DNA of 8,381 nucleotides from Salpingoeca rosetta (lineage: Eukaryota > Protista > Choanoflagellata): positions 333,703 through 342,083 of the forward strand of contig JAWQFM010000019.1 of the NCBI GenBank assembly GCA_033442325.1, in the 5' to 3' direction. Numbering within the stretch: position 1 is the stretch's first letter; every line of letters starts with the position of its first letter. Made by a program: the position numbers and the translations under genes. Under the pieces are notes generated by a model that was given only the letters and a program-made list of their open reading frames with translations, was not told where the DNA came from and searched no databases. Of this stretch, positions 1,117 to 8,381 are shown one piece after another.

Positions 1117-4156
<3,040 letters not shown>

Positions 4157-4448: not shown

Positions 4449-7400
4449 ATGAGCGCACCAAAGCCGGTGCAGAAGAAGGCGTCCCAACGCAGCCGTCGCA
4501 AGAAGGTGTTCATTTCGCTGCGGTTCGGAGAGGCTGGCCATGCAGGCAAGCTGCTCAAGCGCGAGTTGGAGCAGGTGCACGGCCTGGACGTGTTCCTGTG
4601 TGATGTTGAGCCTGGTGGCAACATGGGAAAGGAAATCATCACGAACCTTGCGGCCTGTGACTTGGCTGTCATCATGGGCACCAAGACGTACGGCAAGGAG
4701 ACGCCATCCACCTTCAGCACGTTTCAAGAACTTGATTTCATCAAAAATGAGCGCAAGCCATTCTTCTTCATCAAGATGTGCGAGCGGCTTGAAGAGTCGT
4801 TTGCGCGATTCCACCTCCCCGATTCCATCTCCTACTTTCCATGGATACCTGCTTCACGCGATCCCGAGTCCATGTCCCTGCCGCCTGACCTCGCCCCCGC
4901 CATCGTAGACAAGCTCAGCCACATCAGCACCTCTAGCGGCGCGAAGGGCGGCAAAGGCGGCCCCTCCGTCATCACACGGCAGCTCCCAACCACGCTGGAC
5001 GCTGGCCTGACACAGTGGCTGCAGCGTTACAACATGTTGTCCTCCATGGGGCTGGTGCTTGAGAAACTCCACATCACAAGTCTTCACAAATTGGAGCAGG
5101 CAACAGAGGCCATGCGGAATCCGAGAAAGCGTGCACTTGCTAAGCGGCAGCAGCAGAAGCAGGGAAAGAAGGGAGGAGGGCAGGGAAGCGAACCCAAGCC
5201 AACAAAGACCGTGCGACAGTTGTATGAGGGAATACTGATGAGGGAGAAGCAGCTGCAGCCAGCAGAGATTGCCAAGTTCCGGCGAGCGTGCAAGGCGAAG
5301 ACGTGGCGCAACAAAGAGATGGGCAGTGAGCGACATGGAACGTTGGAAGGCACAGAAGAGGTGCACGAACAGGGAGATGAGAAGCAGGAAGAGGGACGTG
5401 AGGGGAGCCAAGAAGAACAGGAGGAGACACAGTCGCACCAGCATCAAGCGAGCGTTGAGTGCCCGCCTGTGCGAAAGGGTGTGGGAGACGAAACCCTGTT
5501 TCGGGAGTGCCTGCAGAGGGTGAGTGGTAAGAACGCAAGAAACAAGATCCTCAGCATTTGGAACAACACGTGTGGCTCGAAAGTTAAGTGAGTATGGACG
5601 TGTTACAAGGATATGCACCTGCAATTCATGAGTAGGGTCCTGGCGGTTTAATGTATCTGGCGTAAATAGAAGTGTGTGCACGATGCTTTGATGGATTGCC
5701 TGATGCGATGTGGCATTCACTCACATCAACACTTTGCACACACACACACATGCATGCATGTATGCGAATGAACACACATACGCACACATGATAACCACAA
5801 CACATGCACCATGCAGCCTTGCAGACAACGATCTTGGACCTGAAGGGGGAAAGGCGATTGGGGAGGCACTGAAGGTGAACACGACGCTGACATCGCTCGA
5901 GTGAGTTGTGCTGTTGTGGCTGTGGCCCTGGGTGTGCATATGTGCGGATTCGTGTGCACGTGCACGTGTGTTTGTGTGGGTGGCAGTGGGCACATTGTTG
6001 TGTTGATGTGGTGTTGATGTGTCTGGGTGAGACAGTGATGTGGTGTGTTGACAAGCGTGAGACGATACGACACACCTGTTTTGTTTTATGTGTGCGTGTG
6101 TGTATGTGAGTGTATGTGAGTGCATGTGGTCTAATTGATTTGCACTTGTGGTTCAGTGGCATGGTGATCGTGATAGTGAAAGGGGATGTGGGTGTGTGGA
6201 TGTAAGTTTTGACCTAAATAGGGGTTGGTTGATTTTCCCTGCCAAGATGTTTTCCCCTTTTGGGGGGGGGGGGGGTTGTGTGTTGTGGAGTAACATAACG
6301 TAATTTGTGGATGTGACATGGTGGTAGTTGTGTGTTTTGTGCAGGTGTGTTTTGGATAGGGATGTGGTGCACGATGCTTTGATGGATTGCCTGATGCGAT
6401 GTGGCATTCACTCACATCAACGCTTTGCACACACACACACACATGCACACACATGCATGCATGTATGCGAATGCACACACATACACACACATGATAACCA
6501 CAACACATGCACCATGCAGCCTTCGGAACAACGATCTTGGACCTGAAGGGGGAAAGGCGATTGGGGAGGCACTGAAGGTGAACACGACGCTGACATCGCT
6601 GGAGTGAGTTGTGTTGCTGTGGCCGTGGCCCTGGGTGTGCATATGTGCGGATTCGTGTGCACGTGCACGTGTGTTTGTGTGGGTGGCAGTGGGCACATTG
6701 TTGTGTTGATGTGGTGTTGATGTGTCTGGGTGAGACAGTGATGTGGTGTGTTGACAAGCGTGAGACGATACGACACACCTGTTTTGTTTTATGTGTGCGT
6801 GTGTGTATGTGAGTGTATGTGAGTGTGCATGTGGTGTAATTGATTTGCACTTGTGGTTCAGTGGCATGGTGATCATGATAGTGAAAGGGGATGTGGGTGT
6901 GTGGATGTGAGTGTTGAGCTAGATAGAGGTTGGTTGATGTTGCCTGACAAGATGTTGTCACACTATTGGGGGGGGGGGTTGTGGAGTAACGTAATTTGTG
7001 AATGTGACATGGTGGTAGTTGTGTGTTTTGTGCAGGTGAGTTTTGGACAGGGATGTGGTGCACGATGCTTTGATGGATTGCCTGATGCGATGTGGCATTC
7101 ACTCACATCAACGCTTTGCACACACACATACACACATGCACACACATGCATGCATGTATGCGAATGAACACACATACGCACACATGATAATCACAACACG
7201 TGCACCATGCAGCCTTTACAGCAACAATCTTAGACCTGAAGGGGGAAAGGCGATTGGGGAGGCACTGAAGGTGAACACGACGCTGACATCGCTGGAGTGA
7301 GTTGTGTTGCTGTGGCCGTGGCCCTGGGTGTGCATATGTGCGGATTCGTGTGCACGTGCACGTGTGTTTGTGTGGGTGGCAGTGGGCACATTGTTGTGTT

Positions 7401-7997
7401 GATGTGGTGTTGATGTGTCTGGGTGAGACAGTGATGTGGTGTGTTGACAAGCGTGAGACGATACAACACACCTGTTTTGTTTTTATATATGTGTGTGTGT
7501 ATGTGTGTGTGTGTGTGTGAGTGCATGTGGTCTCATTGATTTGCACTTGTGGTTCAGTGGCATGGTGATCATGATAGTGAAAGGGGGTGTGGGTGTGTGG
7601 ATGTGAGTGTTGAGCTAGATAGAGGTTGGTTGATGTTGGTTGACAAGATGTTGTCACACTATGGGGGTTGTGTGTTGTGGAGTAACATAACGTAATTTGT
7701 GAATGTGACATGGTGGTAGTTGTGTGTTTTGTGCAGGTGAGTTTTGGACAGGGATGTTGTGCACGATGCCTTGATGGATTGTCTGATGCGATGTGACATT
7801 CACTCACATCAACACTTTACACACACACACACACACATGCACACACATGCATGCATGTATGCGAATGAACACACATACACACACATGATAACCACAAAAC
7901 ATGCACCATGCAGCCTTGACGGCAACGATCTTGGACCTGAAGGGGGAAAGGCGATTGGGGAGGCACTGAAGGTGAACACGACGCTGACATCGCTCTC
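4449..7997 (+). CDS. TIR - SAM-like - LRR protein (candidate intracellular immune receptor), 3' partial; exons 4449-5587, 5817-5900, 6520-6603, 7213-7296, 7914-7997
   Basis: ATG at 4449 opens a 1139-nt exon ending in phase 2 at aa|gtgagt (5588). Four 84-nt phase 2-2 exons follow (atgcag|c ... |gtgagt) and splice in frame to ...NNTCGSKVNLADNDLGPEGGKAIGEALKVNTTLTSLDLRNNDLGPEGGKAIGEALKVNTTLTSLDLYSNNLRPEGGKAIGEALKVNTTLTSLDLDGNDLGPEGGKAIGEALKVNTTLTSLS. No stop is reached before the window end. Confidence 0.85.
4506..4916 (+). other. TIR domain (TIR_2-like)
   Basis: betaA KVFISLR, alphaA AGKLLKRELEQ, betaB GLDVFLCD, BB-loop EPGGN, alphaB KEIITNLAAC, betaC DLAVIMGTKTY, alphaC STFQELDF with Glu at 4728-4730, betaD KPFFFIK. 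Confidence 0.8.
4995..5291 (+). other. SAM-like helical segment with a basic low-complexity insertion
   Basis: LTQWLQRYNM.S.MGLVLEKLHITSLHKL ... LQPAEIAKFRRAC resembles the SAM pattern (W-L-x3-L, helix 3-4, terminal helix). It is interrupted by a K/Q/G-rich stretch. Recognised by pattern only. Confidence 0.4.
5817..5900 (+). CDS. LRR exon 1 (RI-like 28-aa repeat; variable codons GCA GAC = A,D)
   Basis: 84 nt, cag/gt bounded, phase 2-2. Confidence 0.9.
6520..6603 (+). CDS. LRR exon 2 (variable codons CGG AAC = R,N)
   Basis: 84 nt, cag/gt bounded, phase 2-2. Confidence 0.9.
7213..7296 (+). CDS. LRR exon 3 (variable codons TAC AGC = Y,S; also D>N and G>R)
   Basis: 84 nt, cag/gt bounded, phase 2-2. 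Confidence 0.9.
7914..7997 (+). CDS. LRR exon 4 (variable codons GAC GGC = D,G; split codon TC- = S)
   Basis: 84 nt, cag/gt bounded, phase 2-2. Confidence 0.9.
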
Positions 7998-8290
7998 GTG
8001 AGTTGTGTTGTTGTGGCCGTGACCCTGAGCGTGCATATGTGCCAATTCGTGTGCACGTGCACGTGTGTTTGTGTGGGTGGCAGTGGGCACATTGCTGTGT
8101 TGATGTGGTGTTGATGTGTCTGGGTGAGACAGTGATGTGGTGTGTTGACAAGCGTGAGACGATACGACACACCTGTTTTGTTTTATGTGTGTGTGTGTGT
8201 GTGTGTGAGTGTATGTGAGTGTGCATGTGCTGTAATTAATTTGCGCTTTTGCTTCAGTGGCTTGGCGATCTTTTTATTCAATGGTTTTCT

Positions 8291-8294
<4 letters not shown>

Positions 8295-8330
<36 letters not shown>
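8295..8330. repeat. Poly-T run, probably low-quality contig end
   Basis: Similarity to the repeat unit decays from ~8230 and is lost after 8270, followed by T/C homopolymers. Confidence 0.6.
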
Positions 8331-8381
8331 CTCTCCCCTCCTACCCGCTGTCGTTCCCCTTTTTTGTTTCCCTTCCCGCTA

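What the first reader, a model, noticed from the sequence alone, without database searches (positions are those of the whole stretch)
4449..7997. TIR-(SAM-like)-LRR architecture with no NTPase or transmembrane segment in the visible part
Seen: an N-terminal TIR, a possible SAM, an acidic linker, an NNTCG cap and then RI-like LRRs. No Walker A motif, signal peptide or hydrophobic TM stretch lies between TIR and LRR. Known: plant TNLs have TIR-NB-ARC-LRR, TLRs have LRR-TM-TIR and SARM1 has ARM-SAM-SAM-TIR. Inference: a cytosolic sensor in which variable LRRs detect a ligand and SAM-type oligomerisation replaces the STAND NTPase in clustering the TIR. This would be an unusual receptor class.
Basis: partly seen in the sequence, partly recalled or inferred. 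Interest (0 to 1): 0.75.

Follow-up and report, generated by a model that had tools for sequence, protein, structure and literature searches.

The report
TIR-headed Roco GTPase receptor gene
This is the front half of a choanoflagellate gene built like an immune receptor (TIR domain, SAM-like domain, one-repeat-per-exon leucine-rich repeats), but it does have a nucleotide switch: a Roc-COR GTPase lies just beyond an assembly gap, so it belongs to the known Roco family.

Summary
Window 4449-5587 is one open exon. It encodes a divergent TIR fold (Z 12-13 to solved TIR domains, with an invariant Glu at the catalytic position), a tentative SAM-like bundle and an acidic linker. Four 84-base, phase-2 exons follow, each encoding one 28-residue RI-type leucine-rich repeat. 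No Walker A motif, signal peptide or membrane segment lies in the visible part.

The window ends at a 1,015-N gap. Beyond it lie two more LRR exons and then a Roc GTPase (Pfam 33.8 bits, cut-off 27; G1, G3 and G4 motifs intact) with a weak COR match. All splice phases fit, giving at least 1,193 codons in frame.

Five more loci in this genome have the same layout. One of them is Salpingoeca rosetta PTSG_12838, annotated only as a hypothetical protein. The gene is therefore a TIR-SAM-like-LRR-Roc-COR Roco protein, not an NTPase-less receptor.

The LRR exons differ almost only at the three codons that face the presumed ligand. This resembles brown-algal Roco genes.

Roco proteins carrying TIR domains are already in print for Trichoplax, sea anemones and Chondrus. 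This scan had also noted this gene and this family on neighbouring and other DNA. I rate it a new variant of a known kind, of moderate interest.

The parts
4449..5587 (+). Exon 1 (379 codons plus 2 nt): TIR domain, SAM-like domain, acidic linker and the first LRR strand
   Evidence: Open frame from the ATG at 4449, with a GTGAGT donor at 5588 in phase 2. Conserved in paralogs at 81-84% nt identity. dN/dS is 0.22-0.30 overall.
4491..4937 (+). TIR-fold domain (residues 15-163)
   Evidence: AlphaFold model with a five-fold beta-alpha pattern. VIA-align Z 12-13.1 to the TIR domains of RPV1, RPS4, SARM1 and IL-1RAcPb. TIR_2 is hit in 11 of 11 family members. dN/dS is 0.08-0.23.
4728..4730 (+). Codon for Glu94, the candidate catalytic glutamate of the TIR domain
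   Evidence: One of only two invariant columns among 79 family sequences. In the profile alignment it pairs with the second Glu of CLEEL in the Roq1 TIR domain.
4998..5312 (+). SAM-like helical domain (residues about 184-288) with a K/Q-rich disordered insert
   Evidence: AlphaFold model with pLDDT 64. The best matches among 48,161 chains are SAM domains, at Z 5.2-7.0. No Pfam SAM hit for this sequence and no Foldseek hit. Tentative.
5349..5498 (+). Acidic linker (residues 301-350)
   Evidence: 15 D/E against 4 K/R in these 50 residues. This is the least constrained part of exon 1, with dN/dS 0.2-0.77.
5547..5576 (+).
   Evidence: Position. Conserved in the close paralogs, and reads ILSIWNNTS in PTSG_12838. 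A capping role was not tested.
5588..5816 (+). Intron 1, which already contains the 3' part of the repeated intron
   Evidence: Repeat family D2 starts at 5591. The acceptor ...catgcag|C matches the acceptors of the later units.
5817..5900 (+). LRR exon 1 (84 nt, phase 2 at both ends, one 28-residue RI-type repeat)
   Evidence: (LRR_6, E 7.5e-4).
6520..6603 (+). LRR exon 2
   Evidence: (LRR_6, E 8.7e-4).
7213..7296 (+). LRR exon 3
   Evidence: (LRR_6, E 0.018).
7914..7997 (+). LRR exon 4, the last one before the assembly gap
   Evidence: (LRR_6, E 0.004).
5591..8284 (+). Tandem array of exon-plus-intron units of about 700 bp (spacing 693-705)
   Evidence: The units are about 91-93% identical, introns included.

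Best explanation
The finding is the 5' half of a Salpingoeca rosetta Roco gene. Its product reads TIR, SAM-like domain, acidic linker, at least six RI-type LRRs, Roc GTPase, COR.

Shown here:
- The exon structure and splice phases.
- The TIR fold with an invariant Glu at the catalytic position.
- A Roc domain with intact G1, G3 and G4 motifs.
- One LRR per 84-nt phase-2 exon, carried in tandem units of about 700 bp.
- Variation between these units concentrated in the three codons that face the concave surface of the repeat.

Inferred mechanism:
- The LRR surface binds a ligand in the cytosol.
- Binding changes the nucleotide state or dimerisation of Roc-COR. Roc-COR would then play the switch role that a STAND NTPase plays in NLRs.
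- The SAM-like domain helps bring TIR domains together.
- Clustered TIR domains cleave NAD+ or make a nucleotide signal.
- Unequal crossing-over between the units, which keep the reading frame, adds, removes and reshuffles repeats.

My confidence is about 0.9 for the architecture and Roco identity, and about 0.4 for the immune-type NADase mechanism.
For: Gene structure:
- The window is G000:C19:333703-342083, and 1,015 N follow its end.
- After the gap come two more 84-nt LRR exons (L008 1806-1889 and 2486-2569).
- Next is an exon whose acceptor at L008 2787 is in phase 2, like every LRR exon.
- The visible exons sum to 3,579 nt, which is 1,193 codons in frame. The last exon matches the C-terminus of the annotated paralog.

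Roc-COR:
- Pfam Roc scores 33.8 bits against a cut-off of 27.
- The motifs GHYGIGKT, DFAGQ and TKAD are present.
- The best matches among solved structures are LRRK2 Roc domains.
- COR-A is matched at E 2e-3 to 2e-5, and COR-B at E 0.05-0.16. Both are in the right order in three paralogs.

Family:
- Six loci carry the TIR exon upstream of Roc-COR.
- The C29 locus is PTSG_12838, which has TIR_2, LRR_6 (48.7 bits), Roc and COR-A.

TIR:
- The fold matches solved TIR domains.
- Glu94 is invariant in 79 sequences and aligns with the Roq1 CLEEL glutamate.
- dN/dS is 0.08-0.23.

LRR variation:
- 7 of 9 hypervariable-codon bases vary, against 3 of 75 elsewhere in the exon (p 9e-7).
- In the exon framework 2 of 72 columns vary, against 91 of 494 in the introns (p 2.5e-4).
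Against: - I examined no transcript for this particular gene.
- The LRR array is interrupted by an assembly gap, so the repeat number is unknown and the near-identical units may be misassembled.
- COR stays below Pfam's cut-off.
- The SAM-like call rests on a model with pLDDT 64 and Z no higher than 7.
- This sequence alone does not pass TIR_2.
- No function has been tested for any member I could find. Roco proteins elsewhere (LRRK2, Dictyostelium Rocos, plant TRN1) work in trafficking, the cytoskeleton and development, not immunity.
- Close paralog P2 appears to carry a frameshift in Roc, so some copies may be decaying.
Confidence: 0.8

Rival explanations
1. One reading: a TIR-SAM-LRR sensor without any NTPase, in which SAM oligomerisation alone clusters the TIR. 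This could survive only as a short isoform that ends before the Roc exon.
For: No P-loop or membrane segment lies within window 4449-7997. A SAM-like fold is plausible.
Against: Roc-COR follows in the same frame and phase. The order is kept in six loci and in the annotated single product PTSG_12838. I saw no in-frame stop or other sign of a terminal exon after the LRR exons.
Confidence: 0.03
2. A Roco signalling protein with a non-immune role, such as the cytoskeleton, trafficking or cell-state signalling. The TIR would act as a protein-protein adaptor, not an enzyme, and the LRR variation would reflect relaxed constraint plus gene conversion.
For: Characterised Roco proteins are mostly non-immune (background in PMC4104024). 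No immune test exists for this family.
Against: Variation is concentrated in the three concave-face codons, while the framework is more conserved than the introns. The Glu at the catalytic position is invariant across 79 sequences. The genome holds at least 37 loci of this TIR type joined to many different partners. All three observations are more typical of conflict systems.
Confidence: 0.25
3. This copy is a decaying or misassembled duplicate: a pseudogene, or a collapsed or expanded repeat array next to a gap.
For: The units are near-identical and about 700 bp long, and they adjoin a 1,015-N gap. Unrelated T-rich sequence lies at 8250-8381. Paralog P2 shows an apparent frameshift.
Against: Every visible exon is open, the splice sites are canonical and the total is in frame. 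The TIR domain is under purifying selection.
Confidence: 0.1

Closest known systems
Brown-algal LRR-ROCO genes (Ectocarpus and others; PMC3341825, PMC11378527)
   Same: LRR-Roc-COR core. One LRR per exon, all in phase 2. Exon duplication and shuffling. Proposed as diversifying candidate immune receptors.
   Different: The exons there are 72 nt (24-residue repeats), against 84 nt (28-residue RI-type repeats) here. The brown-algal proteins have no TIR or SAM-like head. The lineages are unrelated (stramenopile against choanoflagellate), so the design is probably convergent.
TIR-bearing Roco proteins of animals and algae: Trichoplax Rocos (PMC4104024), sea-anemone 'NG1' LRR-Roc-COR-TIR_2 (PMC5094078), Chondrus TPR-ROCO-TIR (PMC11378527)
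   Same: A TIR domain and a Roc-COR GTPase in one protein, with LRRs in NG1.
   Different: In NG1 and Chondrus the TIR is listed after Roc-COR. Here it is N-terminal and followed by a SAM-like domain. Homology of the TIR domains was not tested.
SARM1 / TIR-1 (ARM-SAM-SAM-TIR NADase)
   Same: A TIR domain with the catalytic Glu next to a SAM-type domain. Solved SARM1 TIR and SAM domains are among the structural matches.
   Different: The order is reversed, there is a single diverged SAM-like domain and no ARM domain. LRRs and Roc-COR are present here instead.
NLRs: plant TIR-NB-ARC-LRR and animal NACHT-LRR with RI-type, exon-modular LRRs (PMC6642158)
   Same: An effector head, a nucleotide switch and RI-type LRRs with exon modularity. 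Variation falls on the LRR concave face.
   Different: The switch is a Roc GTPase, not a STAND ATPase. NACHT matched only at the P-loop, at E 0.098. The LRRs lie before the switch, not after it.
Salpingoeca rosetta PTSG_12838 (XP_004989891.1, UniRef100_F2UM66)
   Same: A paralog in the same genome with the same full architecture.
   Different: About 38% identical in exon 1 and 55% in Roc-COR. Its LRR exons are diverged, not near-identical tandem copies. It is annotated only as hypothetical or COR-domain-containing.

Membership tests
ROCO proteins | Roc (Ras of complex) GTPase domain | tested here: met
   Pfam Roc 33.8 bits against a cut-off of 27. GHYGIGKT, DFAGQ and TKAD are present. LRRK2 Roc domains are the best solved matches.
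ROCO proteins | COR domain directly C-terminal to Roc | tested here: inconclusive
   COR-A at E 2e-3 to 2e-5 (18-25 bits, cut-off 35.3) and COR-B at E 0.05-0.16. Both are in the right place and order in three paralogs. UniRef names the paralog as COR-domain-containing. No solved COR structure was matched by sequence.
TIR domain | Profile match to TIR or TIR_2 | tested here: inconclusive
   This sequence scores 12.8-14.6 bits against a cut-off of 28. All 11 relatives hit TIR_2, the best at 1.4e-6. The more distant member P0150 reaches 28.8 bits. A 79-sequence profile finds only TIR chains at E 1e-3 to 5e-2.
TIR domain | Five-stranded flavodoxin-like TIR fold | tested here: met
   Model with pLDDT 72.5 and pTM 0.70. 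Z 12-13.1 with rmsd about 3-3.6 A over 128-137 residues to the TIR domains of RPV1, RPS4, SARM1 and IL-1RAcPb.
Enzymatic (NADase-type) TIR | Catalytic Glu at the start of helix C | tested here: met
   Glu94 is invariant in 79 sequences and aligns with the second Glu of Roq1 CLEEL. That this Roq1 residue is the catalytic one rests on my own knowledge. Activity cannot be tested here.
SAM domain | Profile match to SAM_1 or SAM_2 | tested here: not met
   This sequence has no SAM hit at E up to 10. No SAM family appears among the 25 (of 63) families listed for the nine-member alignment, so a single-member SAM hit lower in that list cannot be excluded.
SAM domain | Five-helix SAM fold | tested here: inconclusive
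   15 of the 16 best matches among 48,161 chains are SAM domains, with 58-74 residues aligned, but Z is only 5.2-7.0 and the model's pLDDT is 64. Foldseek found nothing.
RI-type LRR (LRR_6) | 28-29-residue repeats matching LRR_6 | tested here: met
   Each 28-residue exon hits LRR_6 at E 7.5e-4 to 0.018. The full-length paralog scores 48.7 bits against a cut-off of 23.4.
NLR / STAND receptors | NACHT or NB-ARC ATPase | tested here: not met
   Only a P-loop-level NACHT match at E 0.098, with no matched stretch passing.
Toll-like receptors | Signal peptide, extracellular LRRs, a membrane helix, then TIR | tested here: not met
   The TIR is N-terminal, the highest 19-residue hydropathy mean is 1.11 and the N-terminus is basic.
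Exon-modular LRR-ROCO design (brown-alga type) | One LRR per exon, symmetric phase-2 exons, duplicated units | tested here: met
   84-nt phase-2 exons in all six loci. Units of about 700 bp. The design works the same way, but common descent was not tested.

The most novel reading that the evidence does not exclude
Choanoflagellates, the closest relatives of animals, run a diversifying cytosolic immune-receptor system built on a Roco GTPase instead of a STAND ATPase. Hypervariable one-exon LRR cassettes sense ligands, and an enzymatic TIR helped by a SAM-like oligomeriser is the output. This would be a third, independent way of building an NLR-like receptor.
Probability: 0.3. Interest if true: 0.75.

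Novelty: new variant of a known kind. Interest (0 to 1): 0.45.

Why it matters
If the inferred mechanism holds, the nucleotide-switch slot of NLR-type receptors can be filled by a Roc-COR GTPase. It would also mean that the sister group of animals evolved diversifying LRR receptors with an enzyme-type TIR output. That bears on how animal innate immunity was assembled, and it gives Roco proteins (the LRRK2 family) a testable sensor role. The gene family is already in the databases as hypothetical proteins, and this scan had already flagged it.

Tried and rejected
- Pfam on exon 1 alone gave only a sub-threshold TIR_2 hit and no SAM.
- An 11-sequence profile against solved structures gave TIR chains only at E 0.4-1.4. 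The 79-sequence profile improved this to about 1e-3.
- Foldseek on the SAM-like model found nothing.
- phmmer of the COR exon against solved structures gave only chance hits.
- The alternative donor at 5520 (phase 0) was rejected, because the LRR acceptors need phase 2.
- I considered a hidden exon in intron 1, such as PTSG_12838 has after its first exon. None is open in 5588-5816, and close paralogs P3 and P4 have the same short first intron.
- One alignment call failed because the paralog's GT-rich intron contains stops. This showed that the 'Roc-COR ORF' here reads through a 111-nt intron that happens to be open in frame.
- Literature searches for the accession numbers found nothing.
- The exons were searched one by one. 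The annotated paralog served as the full-length example.
Full report
**What the window is.** The window maps to G000:C19:333703-342083 in a 55.4-Mb, 68-contig genome. The sequence looks eukaryotic, with short exons, GT/AG introns and many GT/CA microsatellites. A paralogous locus on C29 translates with 100% identity over 449 residues to NCBI XP_004989891.1, PTSG_12838 of Salpingoeca rosetta. The organism is therefore this choanoflagellate, and earlier notes of the scan say the same.

**Exon 1 and the absences.**
- The ATG at 4449 opens a 379-codon frame.
- Of the two GTGAGT donors, at 5520 and 5588, only 5588 (phase 2) fits the LRR acceptors.
- Exon 1 has no Walker A motif.
- No 19-residue window has a mean hydropathy above 1.11.
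- The N-terminus is basic.
- Residues 301-350 hold 15 acidic residues.

**TIR.**
- On its own the sequence fails Pfam TIR_2, at 12.8-14.6 bits against a cut-off of 28.
- The word search found four relatives. One of them already carries a precomputed TIR_2 hit.
- All 11 aligned members hit TIR_2, the best at 1.4e-6, and 10 hit DUF4062.
- The AlphaFold model of residues 1-180 (pLDDT 72.5, pTM 0.70) has five beta-alpha units.
- Foldseek's best hits are TIR domains and the related nucleoside-processing fold (NDT, MilB) at E about 1e-4.
- VIA-align gives Z 12-13.1 over residues 16-163 to the TIR domains of RPV1, RPS4, SARM1/TIR-1, IL-1RAcPb, RUN1, Hydra TRR-2, SPARTA and MyD88.
- The exhaustive profile search found 1,048 representative clusters of this TIR type.
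- In a 79-sequence alignment only Gly82 and Glu94 are invariant.
- In the profile alignment to the Roq1 TIR, Glu94 pairs with the second Glu of CLEEL. By my own knowledge of plant TIRs, that is the catalytic glutamate.
- Among the four close paralogs the TIR part has dN/dS 0.08-0.23 at dS of about 0.4-0.6.

**SAM-like part.**
- This sequence has no Pfam SAM hit, and no SAM family appears in the part of the list shown for its relatives.
- Foldseek found no match.
- The model of residues 172-305 (pLDDT 64) has six helices with a disordered K/Q-rich insert.
- In a search of 48,161 representative chains that does not depend on Foldseek, 15 of the best 16 matches are SAM domains (p73, EphA1, EphA2, Tric1, tankyrase, SARM1).
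- These alignments cover 58-74 residues, but Z is only 5.2-7.0.
- This is a coherent but weak signal, so I call the domain SAM-like and tentative.

**LRR exons.**
- Four 84-nt exons lie in the window: 5817-5900, 6520-6603, 7213-7296 and 7914-7997. Two more lie after the gap, at L008 1806-1889 and 2486-2569.
- Each has the acceptor ...catgcag| and a |GTGAGT or |GTAAGT donor. Each starts with the third base of a codon and ends with two bases.
- Each encodes one 28-residue repeat of the form L-x-x-N-D-L-G-P-E-G-G-K-A-I-G-E-A-L-K-V-N-T-T-L-T-S-L plus a junction codon. Each hits LRR_6.
- Exon plus intron forms a unit of about 700 bp.
- Ten of the 84 exon positions vary among the six copies. Seven of these fall in the nine bases of the junction codon and the two codons before Asn (Fisher p 9e-7).
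- By established LRR structure, these are the x positions of LxLxxN on the concave face.
- The rest of the exon varies less than the introns: 2 of 72 columns against 91 of 494 (p 2.5e-4).
- The framework is therefore conserved while the contact codons diversify.
- The other five loci also have 84-nt phase-2 LRR exons. The most distant locus has eight diverged exons with short introns.
- The one-exon-per-repeat design is therefore old, and the near-identical array in this gene is recent or homogenised.

**What lies beyond the window.**
- The window ends at 1,015 N.
- After the last LRR exon, an acceptor at L008 2786/2787 (phase 2) opens an exon with GHYGIGKT, DFAGQ and TKAD.
- Pfam Roc scores 33.8 bits against a cut-off of 27. 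LRRK2 Roc domains are the best solved matches.
- A 111-nt GT-rich intron (L008 3849-3959), open in frame here by chance, separates this exon from a second one (L008 3960-4566). That second exon carries sub-threshold COR-A and COR-B matches in the right order. The same holds in two other paralogs.
- A last exon (L008 4817-5083) matches the C-terminus of PTSG_12838.
- The visible exons add up to 3,579 nt, which is 1,193 codons in frame. Each exon hidden in the gap would add 28 more.
- No kinase, WD40 or other domain follows. A CCA-adding-enzyme-like gene lies on the other strand further on.
Every search was made exon by exon, by reference.

**Family.**
- Six loci share the order TIR exon, LRR exons, Roc-COR: C19 (two loci), C17, C2, C29 and C1.
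- A probable seventh pair lies at C26:763108-766936.
- PTSG_12838 shows TIR_2 (27.4 bits), LRR_6 (48.7), Roc (37.0) and COR-A (E 3e-4) in one annotated product.
- The genome has at least 19 Roc loci and at least 37 loci of this TIR type.
- This TIR type also occurs fused to a SecA/helicase region, to PDZ (named Smr-domain-containing by UniRef), to WD40, to an AIG1 GTPase and to extracellular NHL/LamG modules.

**Interpretation.**
- What remains is a cytosolic LRR sensor with a TIR head, but built on a Roco chassis.
- The likely logic is that ligand binding at the hypervariable LRR face changes the state of the Roc-COR switch. SAM-assisted clustering of the TIR would follow, and then Glu94-dependent NAD+ chemistry.
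- Only the anatomy is shown. Every functional step is inferred.

**Comparison with the literature.**
- Brown-algal LRR-ROCO genes have one LRR per 72-bp phase-2 exon. They are proposed as diversifying receptors and have no TIR (PMC3341825; PMC11378527).
- PMC11378527 also notes that N-terminal TIR domains occur in some Roco proteins, and lists TPR-ROCO-TIR in Chondrus.
- Trichoplax Roco proteins include TIR-bearing forms (PMC4104024).
- Sea anemones have LRR-Roc-COR-TIR_2 (PMC5094078).
- The choanoflagellate immune survey lists TLRs, kinase-TIRs, SARM1 and TIRs joined to Ank, Arm or SH2 domains. The word 'Roc' does not occur in it (PMC6040629).
- No paper cites PTSG_12838.
- I therefore rate this a new variant of a known kind.

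**Earlier notes of this scan.**
- The same gene's last two LRR exons were described just beyond my window (s1-444836).
- A TIR-SAM-LRR-Roc-COR paralog was described as 'one of six' (s1-436004).
- A second, larger family, LRR-ankyrin-Roc-COR-TIR-SAM, was also described (s1-442056, s1-432458, s1-435939).
- I reached the architecture, the count of six and the hypervariable codons independently before reading these notes, and they agree. I did not test the second family.

Noticed in passing
window 1874-2668 (+): An upstream exon of a different gene encodes the NAD-binding Rossmann part of a Gfo/Idh/MocA oxidoreductase (Pfam E 4.3e-11). A 466-N gap lies at 3086-3551.
   Followed up: partly
window 8250-8381: At the edge of the N gap the repeated intron sequence breaks off. 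It gives way to unrelated T-rich DNA that includes a run of 36 T. This may be an insertion or an assembly join.
   Followed up: no
G000, many contigs (for example C23:384286, C35:480172, C35:355525, C4:1718135): At least 37 loci encode this TIR subtype. Annotated S. rosetta members are fused to a SecA/helicase region (PTSG_06287) and to PDZ (PTSG_06434, named Smr-domain-containing by UniRef). Metagenomic relatives are fused to WD40 or an AIG1 GTPase.
   Followed up: partly
G000:C26:763108-766936 (-): A probable seventh gene with a TIR head and a Roc domain. The TIR match lies 2.3 kb upstream of a Roc match that is 44% identical to this gene's.
   Followed up: no
G000:C19:106000-111000 (L010, paralog P2): The Roc-COR match splits into two frames that overlap by one base. 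This could be a frameshift, so a pseudogene, or a sequencing error.
   Followed up: no
L008 3849-3959: This 111-nt GT-rich intron inside Roc-COR is open in frame in this gene, so a plain ORF scan reads straight through it. The same intron in the C2 paralog holds three stops.
   Followed up: yes
L008/L009, about 13,300-16,000 in extended window coordinates, minus strand: The downstream neighbour on the opposite strand looks like a tRNA nucleotidyltransferase / poly(A) polymerase-family gene, judged from its translated motifs by eye only.
   Followed up: no
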